Part shown: piece by piece, positions 28,501 through 37,669 of the stretch
How the letters are laid out: the number at the start of each line of letters is the position of its first letter
Position numbering within the stretch: the first letter of the stretch is position 1
Assembly (NCBI RefSeq): GCF_016433145.1
Contig: NC_058133.1
Span: 277,744,641-277,808,640 of the forward strand
Length of the DNA: 64,000 nucleotides
From: Gracilinanus agilis
Lineage: Eukaryota
Reading direction: 5' to 3'
Notes under the pieces: generated by a model
Told to the model about the DNA's origin: nothing
What the model saw: only the letters and a program-made list of their open reading frames with translations
Database searches by the model: none
Made by a program: the position numbers and the translations under genes

Positions 28501-30175
28501 TGAAACTCAGATTTTGTATGTACTGCAGGAAGGCACTAGTATAACTTGTATCAAACTATTTACTGCCTCAGAAGTAGAAGAAGGGCAGGAGGGAGAGAGT
28601 CTGAATCAGAAAATATCAGAAGACAATTGTCAAAAATTGTTTCTACATATAACTGAAAAAAATAATATTTAATTAAAAAACCTCTCCAGGGTAGCTGGGT
28701 AGCTCAGTGGATTAAGAGCCAGGCCTAGAGATGGGAGTTCCTGGGTTCAAATCTGGCCTTAGACACTTCCCAGCTGTGTGACCTGGGCAAGTCACTTAAC
28801 CCCCATTGCCTAGCCCTTAGTACTCTTCTGCCTTTGAACCAATACACAGTATTGATTCTAAGACAGAAGGGAAGAGTTTTTTAAAAAGTGGAATTTGAAC
28901 CCAGTTCCTCTGGCTCAGGGAAGACTCACTGAATTTGGAGTCAACATCTAGGCTCAATTTTCTTGCCCCGTCTATGATCTCAGGCAAATCTTCATTTCTT
29001 TGTACTTCATTTTCCTCATTTACAAAATGAGAGTGTTGAGGGAGCAACTGGGTGGCTCAATGAATTGAGAACCAGGCCTAGAGATGGGAGGTCCTAGGTT
29101 CAAATCTGACCTCAGAGACACTTCCCAGCTGTGTGACCCTGGGCAAGTCACTTGACCCCCATTGCCTAGCTCTTACCACTCTTCTGCCTTGGAACCAATA
29201 CACAGTATTGATTTTAAGGGGAAAGGGAAGGAGTTATAAAACAAACAAACAAACTCCCCCTCAGATTTCAGGAGAGATTGGTTGGGCTAGGGTTGGTCAA
29301 GAGAGAGAGCAAAGAAGGGCATTTTGGGCAAGCTAGAAAGGTTGTGAGGGCAACAGTTACACCATGTTCCAGGAGGACATGGGCTGAACCCCAGTAGAGG
29401 ATGTTTATGTATTTATGAACATCAATTAATATTTATTGGTGTTTCCATTCATGCATTGGCTTGTAAGGACTCTTGTGTTTTTCCTGTCTTTCCTTGTGAC
29501 ACTAGGAGCCCCAGTAAGTAATTGTGCCTCTTCCAGGAGCCTGAGAGCTCCTTAAAGGCAGGGACAGTACCTGTCCCATCAGATTGGCAGTGCCTACCTC
29601 TCTTAACTAAGTGGAAACACTCTAAAGGAAGGGACTATGTCTCCCCCATTAGATGGGGTATTCTTTGAAGCTGGTTTAGCTTTTACCTGGGACTGGAAAA
29701 CTTTCCACTGTGGCTAAAGATTTCTTCTAAGCCATCAACAAAAAGAAGTTTAGCGGTGGTCAGGACTGGGACTGGGGGCTGCTGTGAACCCAGGATGGCT
29801 GAGAGCAAAGCTACTAGATGTGGAGGAAGCTGAGAGTTGGGGGAGAGGCCCAATCCTGGAAGCTGAAAACCTTCCCTTTGGTTAGCTGATAGGGCACCTC
29901 TCTAGGAAGCCATGGCACAATATCCAGGGACTCTGTTGCCCCTGATCCTCTTGGGCTTCTCCTCCCAGTAGCTTCCAGAGCAGCCTCCCTGAGGTTAGTA
30001 GGGATAAATGGGACTTACTCTCAAAGTTGCTGATAATATGCTGCAAGCAGAGGTCAGAGAGCATGGGTACGATGGCCAGGCTCCATTCGGGGTCCTCGGA
30101 AATGATGCGACGCATCCTCCGGGAGTTGTTGGCCGGGTTGGCCCCTGCGGTCTTTGATGGTGGGGGGACCGTCAT
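22500..30175 (-). CDS. TCTE1: T-complex-associated testis-expressed protein 1 / dynein regulatory complex subunit 5 (LRR protein), complement join(30019..30175,26000..26568,23608..24057,22500..22877), 517 aa
   Basis: RRMRRIISEDPEWSLAIVP, WKRMFFERHL, LEELDLVYGVKDCGMNFEWNLF, LRR repeats and DGGKQLLEGMSDNKTL match recalled DRC5. Junction phases are 1, 0, 0. The start codon is inferred: accATG, with an in-frame TGA upstream at 30217-30215. Confidence 0.92.
23608..24057 (-). CDS. TCTE1: TCTE1 third coding exon (LRRs)
   Basis: Acceptor cttcag|GTG; VFKLTRSKVDD...NHIGL; donor TTG|GTGAGT. Confidence 0.95.
24780..25002 (-). mobile_element. MAR1-like SINE
   Basis: gtctgactct...catttggggg...tttcttagcaaagatactgg...gccat...tccagctcattt CORE domain. 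Confidence 0.65.
25300..25500 (-). mobile_element. SINE1_Mdo-like SINE
   Basis: Antisense of gggcagctgggtagctcagtggattgagagccaggcctagag..., with a T-tail on the left. Confidence 0.85.
25512..25597 (+). repeat. (TC)n microsatellite, about 39 perfect units
   Basis: Seen directly. Confidence 0.95.
25608..25790 (-). mobile_element. SINE1_Mdo-like SINE
   Basis: Same family pattern, antisense. Confidence 0.8.
26000..26568 (-). CDS. TCTE1: TCTE1 second coding exon
   Basis: Acceptor ctcacag|CC; 569 nt; weak donor AAG|GTAGTG. Confidence 0.92.
28688..28885 (+). mobile_element. SINE1_Mdo-like SINE
   Basis: A box gtagctcagtgg, B box ggttcaaatc, family body. Confidence 0.85.
29041..29240 (+). mobile_element. 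SINE1_Mdo-like SINE
   Basis: Same family pattern. Confidence 0.85.
30019..30175 (-). CDS. TCTE1: TCTE1 first coding exon
   Basis: MTVPPP...IISNFE; phase-1 donor GAGA|GTAAGT; likely acceptor ctcccag|GTAACC at 30181. Confidence 0.85.
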
Positions 30176-31359
30176 GGTTACCTGGGAGCAGGCTAAGCCT
30201 GTGACACAAAGGGTTCACTGGTTTGGGAGCAGGAGACTCCTTAAGCAGAAAGAGCCGGAAGAAGTCGCTGCCAAGGTCCTAGGGCAAGAGACATGGTTAG
30301 TGTCCTTCAGTAGCTGGCATGGCGCAGGCATCCACAAAATGCTTGATGATAAAGATGGAGATAGAGGTCAAGCTGGGCTGTGGCCAGTGCCATCCCGGAA
30401 TCTCTTTTAGGTTAGCCTGGGATATAGGAAGAGCTGGAAAGAGAAGAGTGGGCAGCCAGGGCGAGGGAAAGGCGACGAGGGAAACAGTGGGGACCCCAGA
30501 GGAATATTAGAGGAATGGATGTGGGGCCAGGGCACACTGAGGCAAAGAGGGGACCGTGGGAGTTTGTTGGTCATAATATTTTGGGATGGCAGGAAGCCAG
30601 GTTAAGGAACTTCCTCTACCAATGCAGATTGCTGCCTTCTTGCAATTTATAGTTTTGGAATTGCCTAGGGGTACTAAGAGCTGAGAAATAGCTTGCCCAG
30701 GGTCATAGTACGTGTCAGATGAGACTTGACCTAGGTCTTCTTGCCTTTGAAGCCAGCTCTCTCTTCACTAAGCAACACTGTTTTTCACCTTACCATTAAA
30801 GGAGAGAATTTCTTTATTCTTGGGCAAATGGGGGTTTAATCACCAAAGGATAATACTTTAAAATGATTAAACTTCAACGTTTAATAGAGAGTTCTTTAAT
30901 TAGAATTTGGTTTACAGATCAAGTAAGCAATGGGTTTACTTGACAGAGGTTGGCTTGCTCGCTTTGAGGGAGTTGGGGTACCGCTTTGAGGGGATGTGGT
31001 TGGTGGAAATGGGGAGAGGGGATGAGGATTTGTTCCTGCCAGTAACAGCAAAAGTCTCAAGCAATTGGACTGAGAGCTGCTGCAGAATAGCCTTTGGGAG
31101 GGAACCCGATTGGCTTTGCAAAAATGGATGCACATGGGAGCATGCCTGTGACTGTGGAGAGAAGTGTATCCACAGCTTTTCTATACACACAAAGGATACA
31201 CAAATCTCCAGCTCCCCTCATCTCCCACGAATCAGAGCGCCTTAGGACGGAAGAGAGGGCTATTCTCCCACCCACATCCTCCTTCCCCTAAACTGGGCCT
31301 GACTTCTCCCTCTTAACAGGCTTGGTGGGTTGCAATAGAATCAGGCCCATGCTCTAATT

Positions 31360-31551
31360 CAGTGGTTCCCAAACTTTTTTGGCCTACCATCCCCTTTCCA
31401 GAAAAAATATTACTTAGCCCCCTGGAAATTAATTTTTAAAACTTTTAATAGCAATTAATAGGAAAGATAAATGCACCTGTGGCCATCACTGCCTCCCTGG
31501 ATCGATGCAGCACCCACCAGGGGGCAGTGGCACCTACTTTGGGAATCACTG
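31360..31551 (+). mobile_element. 192-bp non-autonomous hAT MITE, copy A, carrying a CTCF motif
   Basis: 16-bp TIRs cagtggttcccaaact / actttgggaatcactg; 8-bp TSD ctctaatt / ctctagtt. Confidence 0.9.
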
Positions 31552-31796
31552 CTCTAGTTGGATGGTCTGTTCCACAGTCCAGAGGCTAGTCTCAGGTCAA
31601 GGAAACTGCCTTGGTCAGGCCCTTCCCTCTTCCTGATGGCCTATGGTCCCAGGCTTTTCCTTTCTCCATCCTCATCCTTCTAGAGTACTGGTCTGACCCA
31701 AGACCTCTAATCAATCAAGTATTTATTTTAACACTTACTATGTGCCAGACACTGAACTAGATGTTAGTGACAGGGTGCAAAGAATGAAATGAGTGG

Positions 31797-31995
31797 CAGT
31801 TAGGTGGCTCAGGGGATTGAGAGCCTGACTCAGAGTTGGAAGGTCCTGGGTTCAAATTTGGCCTCAGACCCTTCCTAGCTGTGTGACCCTGGACAAGTCA
31901 CTTAACCCCCACTGCCTAGCCCTTACTGCTCTTCTGCCTTGGAACCAATACACAGAACTGATTCTAAGACCGAAGGTAAGGGTTAAAAAAAATGA
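31797..31995 (+). mobile_element. SINE1_Mdo-like SINE
   Basis: Family pattern with an A tail. Confidence 0.8.
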
Positions 31996-32924
31996 ATGAA
32001 ATTATTCCTTTTTGCTATGAATTGACATTCTAAGCTCAGCTTTCTGGTTTGGGATTGGGGAGAGGGTCATCTTTTATCTCCCTGACCCTTTGGGGACCAC
32101 AGGGGGATGATATTGGATGATGGACTAGACTTCTTCCTAGGAGTGAGTCAACCGAAAGAAGGGATGGGAAGGAAGTGGAGAAGGGGGGATAGCAAGGAAG
32201 GAGGCCCCTTGTTTCCTTTTCTCTCCCTCCAGACTCTTGACATTCCAGACAACAGCAGGCATGCGTTGGCAGTGAAAATGGAGGTAAATTTGGGTCTGAA
32301 TTTTGGGGGATGTGATTGTGCCATAAGAGCATCTTTTTAGCCTCACTTATGGGGCCCAGGATGGAGGCTGTAGGACCTAGATGGGCCCCCTCTGACCTCG
32401 TCCTCAAGCCTCTGCCTGCTTCCCCACCTTGCCTGGATTCCTTTTGAATCGTTTCTTGGCTTCCTGCACAGTGGGGAGGGCTCCTTTGAACCAAGCCACT
32501 GTGTTCCCTGGCAGAGGGAGCACAGCAGATGGTGCTGCCCCCCTGTCTGGCCCGACTCGGTGGCTCAGTGCTGGCTGCAGCACAGGTCCCTTCTAGGCAG
32601 CCCCTCCACCACTGAGGAGTCTGCAAGGAGGGAGGGTTCGGAAGATCCCTAAGTGGGATTGGTTATCTGTGAGGCAGAGGTCTGCCCTGGAAGAAGAGGA
32701 GGAAAGGGAAGGAGCCAGGGTTGGGATCTTTGCATTTTGATTCAGATTCATGCCAATTAGAATCCAACACATTTGATAATCAGCCTGGACAATGAGAGGC
32801 CTGTGGGGATGTGGTGGGGTAGAGGTGGGGTGGGAAGGAAAGATTGAGACTGTAAGGAGAAAGGGGCCCGAGAATGAATGGCATCTGAATGGGACAATTG
32901 GGTCTTTTGAAAGAGGATGCTGAG

Positions 32925-33120
32925 GAGTAGCTGGGTGGCTCAGTGGATTAAAAGCCAGGCCTAGAGATGGGTGGTCCTGGGTTCAAATGTGACCTTAGAT
33001 GCTTCCTAGCTGTGTGACCCTGGGCAAATCACTGAACCCCCTTTACCTAACCCTTACCACTCCTGCTTTGGAACCAATATATTGATTCTAAGATGGAAGA
33101 TAGGGGATTAAAAAAAATAA
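32925..33120 (+). mobile_element. SINE1_Mdo-like SINE
   Basis: Family pattern with an A tail. Confidence 0.8.
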
Positions 33121-34514
33121 ATGAGAGAAAGAGGATGTTGTCTCTGAGAGGGGACAGAGTTTGAGGGAGGGATGAATTCTGGGAAGGGTGATATGAAGAG
33201 AGGAAGCAGGTGGGTCTGCTGAGAGAAGATGGTGTCTCTGAAGGAGAACAGGTCCTCTAAGAAGTGGAGAGGTCTTCATGAGGGTTGGGAATCCCTAGAC
33301 GAGGTGTTCCCTAGCTTCTAGGCTCCTGGGGTATTTATTCTGGTTTGGGTCAAGGGCCACGAAAGAGGGGGTGGTTGCTCCCAGAGGAAATGGGAAAGAC
33401 AAGAGAGGAGAGTAGGGAGCTCATCCAGGCCCTGCCTGGTTCTGAGTCACCTTCCCATTGACTCAGCAGAAGGCAGAAGGCATGATGTCAGTTCTGTTCC
33501 AGCTTGGGATCTTCCTGAGAGGTCCAAACCCCTTCCCAGCACAGGAATGCCTTCTCAGGGATGGCTAATTGGAAGTTATCCAAACCTAGTGGTGCCTGGA
33601 ATCTCCTCTCGGGAGTCTACCTTTCTGCTATAAGAGGGAAGTTCCTGATCAGGAGAACCTCTGAACAACTAACTGGGTGGTTTCCCAAATCAACCTGATG
33701 AGAGAGTGTGAGCTTTTATCTAAGGGCATCTCCCAAGAGGAGGTAGTTCTCCCCAGTGAAGGGACACAAGGACCTCCTCTGATGGGCCTGCCAACAAGAT
33801 GACTAGCAAATGAGAGTCAGTCAGGAGGGATACAGGGGGCGAAAAAGGAACTTTTTTCTCACAATCTATAAAATCAAGTTGTGAAGGTGCTCTGCCCTTT
33901 CCAATGCATTCTCTTCAAAATAATAGAGGGGAGGGAACCAAGGCAGGGGGTGGGAGTTCATCCCTTTTCAGCAAGAGAAGCCTGAGAAAGGAACCCCCAG
34001 ACTTCCTGGACCTGGCTGCCGTTTGCCTTTCTGTTTTCTTTTCTGAGCAAAGGTCAGAGATTAGAGTTCCTGAGAATGGACTTTGAATGAAAGTTTAAAA
34101 ACCATCAGGCAACTGGTCAGTTCCTGGGTCTGATCAGTCATTTGGGTGTTGGCTTCCTAGAGGTAAGTTTTTCCAATTTATGTTTGTAGGAGAAGGCAAA
34201 GAACCACAAAACCTTCCACAACTGAGGGAGAGGAACCATGTCTTGGGGGAACTGGAGATTGGTTTTGTAGTGGATAAGGCATGGGCCCTGGAGTCAAGAG
34301 GTCCTGGGTTCAAATCCTCAGAGCTCCCCATACTTACTTAGCCCTGTGATCCTGGCCAATTATTCTCTCCAAAACTCAATTTCAGCATGTTTTAAAATAA
34401 AGATTGGGCTCAATGGAAGACCTCTTCTAGCTCTAAATCTATGATCTTATGACCCCCTCTACAATATTGCCATGAGTTGCTTGGACAGTTGAGGTGGGAG
34501 ATGATTGTTTAAAC

Positions 34515-34706
34515 CAGTGATTCCCAAAGTGGGCGCCACCGCCCCCTGGTGGGTGCTGCAGCGATCCAGGGAGGCAGTGATGGCCACAGGTGCATTTATC
34601 TTTCCTATTAATTGCTATTAAAATTAAAAAAATTTAATTTCCATGGGGCTAAGTCATATTTTTTCTGGAAAGGTGGCAGTAGGCCAAAACAGTTTGGGAA
34701 CCACTG
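34515..34706 (-). mobile_element. 192-bp non-autonomous hAT MITE, copy B (inverted relative to copy A), carrying a CTCF motif
   Basis: TIRs cagtgattcccaaagt / agtttgggaaccactg; perfect 8-bp TSD gtttaaac at 34507-34514 and 34707-34714. Confidence 0.92.
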
Positions 34707-34857
34707 GTTTAAACAGTGTCCACCATGTCTTTTAACTTTCAGGGGGAGTCTAATGAGCTATCTAGTATCTACCTCACAAGGCTATTGTGAGGACCAAATG
34801 AGATAGGATATGTAAAACACTTGGCATATAAATATACACATAAAGCACCTTCTAAAT

Positions 34858-35075
34858 GGGCACTTAGGTGGTACAATGGATAGAATACCCAGACTGGAGA
34901 CTCATCTTCCTGAGTTCAAATTTGAACTTAGTGTGACCCTGGACAAGTCACCTAGTCATGTTTGCCTTAGTTTCCTCATCTACAAAATGAGCTAGAGAAG
35001 GGAATAGCAAACTACTCTGGTACCTTTGCCAAGAAAACTCCAAGTGGGATGATAAAGAGTTGGCCACAACTGAAT
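34858..35075 (+). mobile_element. MAR1-like SINE
   Basis: tRNA-like head, CORE (tttcctcatctacaaaatgagc) and a tttgccaagaaaactcca tail. Confidence 0.65.
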
Positions 35076-37669
35076 GCCACCACCATATAAATATTAGTTC
35101 CTATTATATCTCCTCATTTGTTCGCAGGCTGTGAAATGTTATCATCTTATACATTTTCTGTAGTGGGTGAAATAAAGGCTACCCCATACCTGATATGAAT
35201 ATTGTACACTGAGTGTCTTTGTAGAGGTTGGGAACTCTGTGATGCCAACATTTGGGAAAACCTAGATACCAGCTATTCTGAGGTTTCATTTTGGAGATTT
35301 TTCACCCCCCTGGGGAACTCCAGGTGGTGGCAATGAACTAAAGAGAGAAGCTCCCCCTTTAAGGTCAATTATCCAGAATTGAACCCAGTCCTGTGTTTCT
35401 TGGGCCCTGGGGAGTACAACAAAGTGGGGATATGTCCAGTGATTTCTGGTCTCCTCCATGCCAGGACTCATCACGCTTACAGGTGTATCTGATTTTGAAC
35501 CTCAGTGATCTCTAGTGTGATTGGTAAGGATATGACAGGCAGGGCCCGCCCAATCATGAGAATAGTCCCTGAAAAATTCTCTTTACTTCTTTTTTCCCCT
35601 TTACTTATTTTCTTCTAACACCTGGTAGATTAGTGTTAAGGCCCAATGCAATTGGGTGCCAAGGTTAAAAAAACACATTTGAGGAGCCTCTCTGCCAGTC
35701 CAGCAACTCCGAGGTTCCATGTTAGCATTCATTGTCTACAATAGGTAGTTATTCACTGATAAGGGTGACCAGATGTCCTAGTTCAGCTGATGGTTTGGAT
35801 TTTCAGTGGTCTAAATTGGATAGACAAATGACCAGGGAAATGTCCACTTAGTATAACTGCTGATAACTTGACATTGTAAGAGGCAGAGGTAAGAAGGGAG
35901 AGCCTTTTAGGTATAGGGCACAGCCAGGGCAAAGGTATAGAGATAGATGTTCTGTCCTGTATGAGGAATAGCAAATAGGCCAATTGTAGAGGCGATGAGA
36001 AGACTGGAAAGATGGGATGAGGCCATTCCCATCTCTACCAACATGGCCCTTACCACCACTAGCTTCCAATGTTGTAATGTTGCCCTACAAGCAGAGATTT
36101 TCCCCTGACTAGTTTCCACATAAGGAAGGACTTCCTAACAAATGGACCCTTACTTGTCTTCTTATATATCCTTCTTGGGGAGGAGTGCTATCTCTATGTT
36201 TCTTGGCTATTCCCATAAAACTCTATAAGCAAGTAGAGCCGATTTATGGTGAAATGATCACCTTAACTCGTGAAGAGCTCTGTGTGGGAAATCTGGCCAA
36301 GGCATCTCAAACATGGGACACGACCTGAGGGTTATCAAGTTAGTTGCTGGTTCCATGGAGCATCAGGACAAGGGGCAGAAGGGGATCTCTGGTGGTAGGA
36401 ATGAGGAACCTATGGAGTCATGGAATTGTGGAAGGTATCTTCATCTAGGGCTCAACTGCTGCCATTTGACAGATGAGGAAACTGAGGCACAAAGGGAAGT
36501 GAGTTTTCCAAGGTTACACAGCTGATCCAGTAAGAATTTCAATGCACATCTCCCAAATCCGGTTTATGTCATGTTACCTTTTGTGAGTCATCATTCCTTG
36601 CACCTTCTCCTACTGCCCTCTCCACCCCCAAACCAGAATACTTGGACTGTCTGGCTCAGTCCTGCAGAATTACTTATAAAACGGAAAGTAACACATTTAT
36701 ATGAGCTGTTAGTCTTTACAAAGTGCTTTCCTCCCATCAGTGTCTGGATGGTATACAATAGAAGTCTAATTCCCATTATTAAAATGAGATGACAGTGTGA
36801 GAAGCCGATTGATTTGTCAAGGTCACAGACTAGTCAGTAATGGATGCTGCTGAGATTCCCACTCCCATTTTCTGCTTCATCCCAGGCTCTCTCTCACATC
36901 ATTTCCCTGTCCTCTAAGCTCTGGCTTCAGCAGGCCCCAATCCAGGACTGACCCAAAATGAGTTGTTTTGTTTTTTTTTTTTAACCTTCCTCACTCTACC
37001 TTGAACACTGATAACTCCTACTGGGCTATTCTCAGCATTCTGCTTTCTAAAGGTCATTGCAGTGTCTGTCCACCTTCCCTGGGAGGAGGAAAGGCTGTAG
37101 CAGCTTACTCTGGAGCCAAGGGGAAGAGAGACTGCAAGGAGGGAGGCAAGGGAAAGAAAGTCTGGGCCTCCCAAAGGGGCCTCTCTCCCCAGGGATGCCA
37201 AAGCAGAGTAGGAACAGGGCAGAGGCAGGAGTTTTAATGACGTCCCCTGGCCCTTTTCTTTGGATTTCTCTCCATCTTCTCCTCCACTCTTCTTTGGCTA
37301 GCTCAGCCCTCCCCCACTTACTGTTAATAAGCAAGGGAACCCCAGGTACCTTCCTTCAGCTGTGGGGTGATCCCAAGTGGCTGCTGCTGAGGCTTCCCCC
37401 CCCTCCTACCTGTCCCTTGGGCAGATGGACCATCACAGAGAGAATGTCACAAGGGGCTAACCTGGGAAAGATACCGGAAAGCTGAAGGGGGCATGTTGGC
37501 AAAGGAGGATTCTTTTATGGAGGGGGAGACAGGAGGGGATGAGGGGACAAGGACCAAATGGGGAGCGCAGACACAGGGGATGGGGCAGGGTGACCGCCAA
37601 AGACATGGGCATGGAAGGGATTCGGGATACAAGGGCATCAATCTGCCCCCCTCCCCAAGGTCTCCTCAC

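What the first reader, a model, noticed from the sequence alone, without database searches (positions are those of the whole stretch)
31360..34706. A hAT MITE that delivers complete CTCF sites: two copies form a convergent CTCF pair in the putative TCTE1 intron 1
Seen: two copies (about 90-93% identical by eye) of a 192-bp element, each with its own TIRs and 8-bp TSD, so they are independent cut-and-paste insertions. Each contains a perfect CTCF core preceded by the upstream TGCAG motif. Copy A reads TGCAGcacCCACCAGGGGGCAG (core 31514-31527, + strand); copy B has CCACCAGGGGGCGG on the - strand (34539-34552). Forward-then-reverse is the convergent orientation. Copy B keeps the CpGs next to the motif (gggcgccaccgcc) while copy A has them as TG (aggtgccactgcc). 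Known: CTCF core CCASYAGRKGGCRS, convergent sites anchor cohesin loops, and retroposons such as rodent B2 SINEs spread CTCF sites in a lineage-specific way. Inference: a DNA transposon MITE is seeding marsupial-specific insulators or loop anchors, here between housekeeping AARS2 and the TCTE1 promoter on one side and neuronal TMEM151B on the other. CpG retention in copy B may reflect germline CTCF protection from methylation. The family may already be catalogued among opossum repeats; I cannot verify that.
Basis: partly seen in the sequence, partly recalled or inferred. Interest (0 to 1): 0.75.

Follow-up and report, generated by a model that had tools for sequence, protein, structure and literature searches.

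The report
Two transposon relics carrying CTCF motifs
Two 192-base relics of a cut-and-paste (hAT) transposon sit upstream of a marsupial TCTE1 coding exon, and each carries a strong inherited motif for the genome-folding protein CTCF. That is a known way for such motifs to spread, and nothing here shows that the pair is bound or acts as an insulator.

Summary
The sequence observation holds. Copy A (31360-31551, +) and copy B (34515-34706, inverted) are 192 bp each and about 91-94% identical. They have 15-nt TIRs and their own 8-bp TSDs, so they are independent insertions of one hAT MITE family. Their TSDs fit the Buster/Charlie type (nnnTAnnn).

Each copy holds an exact CCASYAGRKGGCRS core. 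These are the only two hits in 64 kb, even at one mismatch.

- **"Complete" site:** TGCAG lies 8 nt from the core, against 17 nt in validated CTCF sites. These are core-only (M1) sites.
- **Orientation:** convergent is one of four equally likely layouts.
- **CpG contrast:** B keeps 3 and A keeps 1, which simple neutral decay gives in about 11-15% of cases.
- **Motif origin:** the core lies in the subterminal zone of the transposon end. MITEs with the same TIRs in JGI metagenome contigs read a related G-rich palindrome there, not a CTCF core.

hAT-Charlie elements are already known CTCF anchor sources in human, and hAT repeats in lamprey. This scan has reported the same family and motif many times elsewhere in this genome. 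I judge it ordinary: a new member of a known kind.

The parts
31352..31359 (.). Left target-site duplication of copy A (CTCTAATT)
   Evidence: Matches 31552-31559 at 7 of 8 positions. Central TA fits the Buster-type hAT target nnnTAnnn.
31360..31551 (+). MITE copy A, 192 bp, with 15-nt TIRs at 31360-31374 and 31537-31551
31506..31510 (+). TGCAG, 8 nt 5' of the core. Not in register with the known upstream CTCF motif.
   Evidence: compared with the validated sites (17 nt) and the spacing.
31514..31527 (+). CTCF M1 core CCACCAGGGGGCAG
31552..31559 (.). Right target-site duplication of copy A (CTCTAGTT)
34507..34514 (.). Target-site duplication of copy B (GTTTAAAC)
   Evidence: Identical to 34707-34714.
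34515..34706 (-). MITE copy B, 192 bp, inverted relative to A, with TIRs at 34515-34529 and 34692-34706
34539..34552 (-). CTCF M1 core CCACCAGGGGGCGG. It keeps a CpG at core positions 12-13.
34707..34714 (.). Target-site duplication of copy B (GTTTAAAC)
29882..30175 (-). Context: open frame holding the first TCTE1/DRC5 coding exon found. It starts at ATG 30175 and aligns to residues 43-96 of human DRC5. A likely splice donor lies near 30019.

Best explanation
These are two independent, now immobile insertions of one non-autonomous hAT transposon family of the Buster/Charlie type. A transposase supplied in trans cut each copy out and pasted it in. Repair of the staggered 8-bp target cut left the TSDs. 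The family sequence carries a strong core-only (M1) CTCF motif 25-38 nt from one tip, inside the subterminal zone that hAT transposases typically need. Both copies simply inherited that motif. On the divergence of these two copies alone, the insertions date to roughly 8-15 million years ago. The forward-then-reverse layout, the survival of both cores and the CpG difference are all what neutral evolution and chance would give. The copies are latent CTCF sites that may or may not be occupied. No insulator or loop role is shown, and I judge a dedicated one unlikely. Shown: the anatomy, the independence of the insertions, the motif, the failed register of TGCAG, and the gene context. Inferred: the mobilisation mechanism, the age, and neutrality.
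For: - Anatomy: TIRs, separate 8-bp TSDs with central TA, 192 bp and no coding capacity. The outer TSDs of the pair do not match, so this is not a composite element.
- Family type: the Buster TSD consensus nnnTAnnn is documented.
- Relatives: 43 metagenome loci (17 distinct insertion sites) hold 182-207-bp MITEs with the same TIRs. Of these sites, 8 have perfect TSDs, 11 differ by at most one base, and 15 of 17 have TA at positions 4-5. None has the CTCF core, even at 2 mismatches.
- Motif origin: at the homologous end, several relatives reach 57-65% identity over 35-37 nt beyond the TIR, where 99 in 100 shuffled controls stay at or below 54%. They read ACCCCCAGGGGGTAA where the opossum element reads ACCCACCAGGGGGCGG.
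- Neutrality: non-CpG divergence is 4.9% pairwise, about 2.5% per lineage. A simple model gives P about 0.54 that both cores survive, and about 0.11-0.15 for the CpG pattern.
- Methylation context: the surrounding 27-37 kb is CpG-depleted (o/e 0.14 or less, apart from about 0.2-0.45 at 30.0-31.0 kb), as expected of methylated bulk DNA.
- Literature: the published opossum liver CTCF ChIP-seq study names only the MAR_Mdo SINE as a repeat carrier.
Against: - The motif words CCACCAGGGGGCGG and CCACCAGGGGGCAG are strong M1 matches, so occupancy of one or both copies is quite possible.
- They are the only matches to the core within one mismatch in 64 kb.
- The 2012 opossum study could have missed this family. 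It looked for species-specific motif words and dropped 36-nt reads with more than 3 mapping places.
- Only two copies were available, so selection on the motif cannot be excluded.
- The family name, copy number and autonomous partner were not determined.
Confidence: 0.72

Rival explanations
1. One reading: both copies are occupied by CTCF and act together as a convergent loop anchor or insulator between the AARS2/TCTE1-promoter side and TMEM151B. On this view CpG retention in copy B reflects germline protection by bound CTCF.
For: Exact M1 cores in both copies, and the only ones in the window. TE-borne CTCF sites can be insulators. hAT-Charlie elements anchor loops in human.
Against: There is no occupancy data. 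The sites are M1-only, because TGCAG is 9 nt out of register. The orientation is a 1-in-4 chance. A 3-kb spacing is far below usual CTCF loop sizes (my own knowledge). The CpG pattern fits neutral decay. The CpG inside the core sits at core position 12-13, where A is an allowed base, so copy A lost nothing. The region is CpG-poor bulk DNA.
Confidence: 0.08
2. Opportunistic occupancy: one or both copies bind CTCF in some tissues, as many strong motif instances do, but with no selected regulatory role.
For: Motif strength. In known families only part of the motif-bearing repeat copies are bound.
Against: Untested. Young repeats in CpG-poor, probably methylated DNA are often unoccupied.
Confidence: 0.35
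3. The CTCF-like stretch is kept by the transposon for its own use, as a subterminal transposase-binding or hairpin element. It resembles a CTCF site only by coincidence.
For: It lies 25-38 nt from the tip. hAT elements need subterminal repeats beyond the TIR. TIR-sharing relatives keep a related G-rich palindrome at the same place. CCACC and GGTGG form a short palindrome around it.
Against: No transposase is known for this family and no binding data exist. The similarity to relatives is modest: the best is 65%, against a highest shuffled value of 61%.
Confidence: 0.3
4. This is not a transposon pair but a local inverted duplication or an assembly artefact.
For: A 202-nt inverted repeat at 90% identity, with arms 2,953 nt apart.
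Against: Each copy has its own, different TSD and unrelated flanks. The similarity ends at the TIRs. The same architecture with TSDs is seen at 17 unrelated sites in other DNA.
Confidence: 0.02

Closest known systems
hAT-Charlie DNA transposons MER20 and MER91B as CTCF loop-anchor and TAD-boundary sources in human (PMC9902604), and hAT-Charlie/hAT-Tip100 repeats under lamprey CTCF peaks (PMC5504073)
   Same: A cut-and-paste hAT element whose own sequence carries a CTCF motif and scatters it around the genome.
   Different: Those families have ChIP and Hi-C support, and this one has none here. This family is marsupial, much younger than MER20, and a 192-bp MITE.
SINE-borne CTCF expansions: rodent B2, dog SINEC_Cf, opossum MAR_Mdo (Schmidt et al. 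2012, PMC3368268)
   Same: Lineage-specific repeats spread CTCF motif words. Like SINEC_Cf and MAR_Mdo, this element has only the M1 core and no in-register M2.
   Different: Those are copy-and-paste retroposons with shown occupancy. This is a DNA transposon with a finite cut-and-paste burst, and it is not reported in that study.
OC1 (OposCharlie1) non-autonomous elements, such as the 192-bp OC1_Das_NA (PMC3621081)
   Same: A marsupial hAT MITE of the same length, with a TIR of the same general type and an 8-bp TSD.
   Different: The TIR differs (CAGGGGTCCTCAAAC against CAGTGGTTCCCAAAC, 12 of 15). The internal sequence is visibly unrelated and has no CTCF core. This is not the same family.
Buster-family hAT MITEs, such as Mar in Drosophila (PMC3517528)
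   Same: A short non-autonomous element with TIRs starting CAG and 8-bp TSDs of consensus nnnTAnnn.
   Different: No autonomous partner or transposase was identified here.

Membership tests
hAT superfamily, non-autonomous element (MITE) | 8-bp target-site duplication | tested here: met
   Copy A 7 of 8, copy B 8 of 8.
hAT superfamily, non-autonomous element (MITE) | Short terminal inverted repeats beginning CAG (general form YARNG) | tested here: met
   CAGTGGTTCCCAAAC and CAGTGATTCCCAAAG, 13 of 15, in both copies.
hAT superfamily, non-autonomous element (MITE) | Small size and no coding capacity | tested here: met
   192 bp, too short to encode a transposase. The only listed ORF touching either copy (34612-34806, 64 aa) runs out into the flank. 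No Rfam family matches.
hAT superfamily, non-autonomous element (MITE) | An autonomous partner with a hAT transposase and matching ends | not testable with these tools
   No marsupial genome or repeat library (Dfam/Repbase) is available. Only MITE-sized relatives were found.
Buster family of hAT (hAT-Charlie in RepeatMasker terms) | Target-site consensus nnnTAnnn | tested here: met
   CTC-TA-ATT and GTT-TA-AAC. 15 of 17 insertion sites of TIR-sharing relatives also have TA at positions 4-5.
OC1 / OposCharlie1 | OC1 terminal and internal sequence | tested here: not met
   The TIR matches at 12 of 15. By eye, the internal sequence is unrelated to the published OC1_Das-NA consensus. No alignment was run, because that would have meant typing in the published sequence.
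Functional CTCF binding site | Match to the M1 core | tested here: met
   Exact CCASYAGRKGGCRS in both copies.
Functional CTCF binding site | Upstream (M2) motif at the fixed spacing, giving a 'complete' 33/34-bp site | tested here: not met
   TGCAG starts 8 nt 5' of the core, against 17 nt in three validated sites. The centre spacing required is 20-22 bp. By eye, the stretch at the canonical position, CCTGGATCG / CTGGATCGC, does not resemble TGCAGTTCC.
Functional CTCF binding site | In vivo occupancy by CTCF and cohesin | not testable with these tools
Functional CTCF binding site | Loop anchoring or insulation in Hi-C, or in an enhancer-blocking assay | not testable with these tools
   No chromatin-contact data are available.
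Repeat-driven CTCF expansion (B2, SINEC_Cf, MAR_Mdo, MER20 type) | The motif belongs to the family sequence rather than arising after insertion | tested here: met
   Both independent copies share it at the same position. Earlier notes of this scan report the same in other windows, which I did not check.
Repeat-driven CTCF expansion (B2, SINEC_Cf, MAR_Mdo, MER20 type) | Family-wide enrichment under ChIP peaks | not testable with these tools
   The only opossum study found names MAR_Mdo alone. Its design could have missed this family.

The most novel reading that the evidence does not exclude
This hAT MITE family is an unreported DNA-transposon wave of CTCF-site expansion in the opossum lineage. 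On this reading, a substantial share of its copies is occupied by CTCF and cohesin, and some serve as domain boundaries. The 2012 six-mammal study would have missed it because the family uses motif words that are common in all mammals, and because short reads with more than three mapping places were dropped.
Probability: 0.15. Interest if true: 0.55.

Novelty: new member of a known kind. Interest (0 to 1): 0.22.

Why it matters
If the family were shown to be bound, it would add a young cut-and-paste transposon to the list of repeats that remodel CTCF landscapes in a marsupial. So far that list is mostly retroposons. It would also give a natural series of insertions for testing how new CTCF sites affect neighbouring genes. 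As it stands, this locus adds only one more pair of motif-bearing copies to a pattern the scan has already met many times. The specific claims made for the pair (complete sites, a meaningful convergent layout, CpG protection) do not hold up.

Tried and rejected
- **Sequencing runs.** There is therefore no occupancy, copy-number or expression evidence.
- **More opossum copies.** An internal 24-mer found nothing in metagenome contigs. The motif-plus-TIR pattern found nothing in genome contigs or viral contigs. The TIR pattern found nothing in genome contigs.
- **Host of the metagenome relatives.** Not identified. Pfam on 10 ORFs gave only a reverse-transcriptase fragment, and the protein atlas gave nothing.
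- **OC1 identity.** Rejected on TIR and internal sequence.
- **Literature search for the TIR string.** No hits.
- **Rfam and tandem repeats.** Rfam found no real family in 30500-35500. There are no tandem arrays between the copies.
- **Composite-transposon reading.** Rejected, because the outer TSDs differ.
- **Spliced gene models.** TCTE1 and AARS2 exons were searched one by one.
- **Big protein searches.** Not used, because nothing in the claim rests on them.

Full report
**Observation.**
- Copy A spans 31360-31551. It is flanked by CTCTAATT (31352-31359) and CTCTAGTT (31552-31559).
- Copy B spans 34515-34706 in the opposite orientation. It is flanked by GTTTAAAC on both sides (34507-34514 and 34707-34714).
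- Both copies are 192 bp. They end in CAGTGGTTCCCAAAC at one tip and CAGTGATTCCCAAAG (read inward) at the other.
- blastn gives 91.6% identity over 190 nt. A global alignment gives 11 substitutions and two small indels, which is 94.2% without gap columns.
- No third copy lies in the 64-kb window.
- The two TSDs differ from each other, and the outer flanks of the pair do not match. These are therefore two separate insertions, not a duplication and not a composite element.

**CTCF core.** The pattern CCASYAGRKGGCRS occurs exactly twice in the window, at 31514-31527 (+) and 34539-34552 (-). Shuffles give 0.05 expected hits. Allowing one mismatch adds no further site. The two hits are not independent events, because both copies inherited the stretch from one family sequence. 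The real chance question is therefore whether some repeat family happens to contain such a motif, which is not rare.

**What the element is.**
- An 8-bp TSD, TIRs starting CAG, small size and no coding capacity fit a non-autonomous hAT element.
- Both TSDs have TA at positions 4-5 (CTC-TA-ATT, GTT-TA-AAC). That is the target preference of the Buster branch of hAT, against nTnnnnAn for the Ac branch.
- It is not OC1/OposCharlie1. OC1's 192-bp MITE has a different TIR (CAGGGGTCCTCAAAC), a visibly unrelated interior and no CTCF core.
- No repeat library was available, so I could not name the family. It may well be catalogued.

**Relatives outside the genome.** A scan of JGI metagenome contigs for the two TIRs at MITE spacing returned 43 loci from five samples.
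- They collapse to 26 distinct sequences at 17 insertion sites. The elements are 182-207 bp long.
- At 8 sites the TSD is perfect, and at 11 it has at most one mismatch. 15 of 17 have TA at positions 4-5.
- The contigs look eukaryotic, with GC near 40% and few ORFs. I could not identify the host.
- Their interiors are unrelated to the marsupial element. None has the CTCF core, even at two mismatches.
- Similarity does run past the 15 nt that the pattern fixed. At the end that bears the CTCF core, several relatives reach 57-65% identity with copy B over the next 35-37 nt. 99 in 100 shuffled controls stay at or below 54%, and the highest reaches 61%.
- There the relatives read ACCCCCAGGGGGTAA, where the marsupial element reads ACCCACCAGGGGGCGG.

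The CTCF core thus sits 25-38 nt from the tip, in the subterminal zone that hAT transposases commonly require. It looks like a variant of a G-rich palindrome that belongs to this kind of transposon end. That is an inference, not a demonstration. In the relatives I recovered, the full core is absent.

**"Complete" site.** In three CTCF sites used for single-molecule binding work, the T of TGCAGT(T/A)CC lies 17 nt before the first C of the core. Schmidt et al. give a fixed centre-to-centre spacing of 20-22 bp. Here the T lies 8 nt before the core (31506 against 31514), which is 9 nt out of register. The stretch at the canonical position does not resemble the motif. These are core-only (M1) sites, like those of the dog SINEC_Cf and the opossum MAR_Mdo carriers.

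**Convergent layout.** Two randomly oriented copies are forward-then-reverse one time in four. The sites are 3 kb apart, far less than usual CTCF loop spans (my own knowledge). The layout alone carries no information.

**CpG argument.**
- Copy B has three CpGs and copy A has one. The two losses in A are CG to CA, the expected deamination products.
- Non-CpG divergence is 4.9% between the copies, or about 2.5% per lineage.
- With CpG sites decaying 6-15 times faster, a CpG survives with probability 0.47-0.74. The pattern "one copy keeps all three, the other loses at least two" then has probability about 0.11-0.15.
- The CpG inside the core falls at a position where A is an allowed base, so copy A lost no motif quality.
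- The probability that both cores still match after this much divergence is about 0.54, so their survival does not indicate selection.
- The surrounding 27-37 kb is CpG-poor (o/e 0.14 or less). The exception is 30.0-31.0 kb, which peaks at 0.45 over the first TCTE1 coding exon.

**Age.** At 3.21e-9 substitutions per site per year, the rate quoted, 2.5% per lineage gives about 8 million years. Counting all differences roughly doubles that. The estimate rests on two copies only.

**Gene context.**
- TMEM151 exons lie on the + strand at 15.2-18.4 kb.
- TCTE1/DRC5 exons lie on the - strand at 25.9-26.6 kb (residues 94-285) and 29.88-30.18 kb (residues 43-96).
- AARS2 exons lie on the - strand at 49.7-50.1 and 56.2-56.6 kb.
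- The TCTE1 exon at 30 kb begins with ATG 30175 in a good start context. A plausible splice acceptor lies about 20 nt upstream.

The MITEs therefore lie either in a 5'-UTR intron or in the AARS2-TCTE1 intergenic space, and I cannot tell which.

**Occupancy.** The decisive test was out of reach. The one opossum CTCF ChIP-seq study found reports hundreds of sites carried by the MAR_Mdo SINE and no DNA transposon. Its screen looked for motif words that are over-represented in one species, and it discarded 36-nt reads with more than three mapping places. A family that uses universally common words could therefore have been missed. This is weak evidence either way.

**Comparison and novelty.** DNA transposons that carry CTCF sites are established. 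hAT-Charlie elements such as MER20 and MER91B supply loop-anchor and boundary sites in human. hAT-Charlie and hAT-Tip100 repeats are strongly enriched under lamprey CTCF peaks. This scan has already reported the same family and motif in many other windows of this genome. Its follow-ups reached the same verdict: a real MITE, an inherited motif, binding untested.

- The upstream motif fails on register.
- The CpG and orientation arguments have been put on a quantitative footing.
- TIR-sharing relatives carry a related palindrome but not the CTCF core.

**Verdict.** This is an ordinary pair of transposon relics with latent CTCF motifs, a new member of a known kind.

Noticed in passing
L001-L043 (JGI metagenome contigs JGI24158J21664, JGI24159J19872, JGI24021J15306, JGI24022J15233, Ga0210059): A MITE family of 182-207 bp has exactly the same 15/14-nt TIRs as the marsupial element and Buster-type 8-bp TSDs. 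It occurs at 17 insertion sites in eukaryote-like contigs (GC about 40%) of an unidentified host. The interiors are unrelated, but the subterminal ends are similar. This may point to a shared or horizontally moved hAT lineage.
   Followed up: partly
window 29882-30175 (-): The first TCTE1/DRC5 coding exon found starts at an ATG that aligns with residue 43 of human DRC5. Either the marsupial protein is about 40 residues shorter at the N-terminus, or those residues lie in an unmapped upstream exon.
   Followed up: partly
window 1-64000: Apart from the two MITE copies, no match to the 14-nt CTCF core consensus within one mismatch exists in the whole 64 kb. That includes the several MAR1-like SINE copies. 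The MAR_Mdo family is the repeat reported to carry CTCF sites in opossum.
   Followed up: partly
window 31790-31992, 32921-33116, 34287-34315, 34893-34954: Several copies of a marsupial SINE (GGTCCTGGGTTCAAAT...GTGTGACCCTGGGCAAGTCACTTA) lie between and beside the two MITEs. Two of them are about 80% alike over 142 nt.
   Followed up: no
window 33127-33391: Three dispersed copies of a 31-nt G-rich unit (GAAAGAGGATGTTGTCTCTGAGAGGGGACAG) lie in a stretch with strong positive GC skew (0.19 at 32-34 kb). TRF calls no tandem array.
   Followed up: partly
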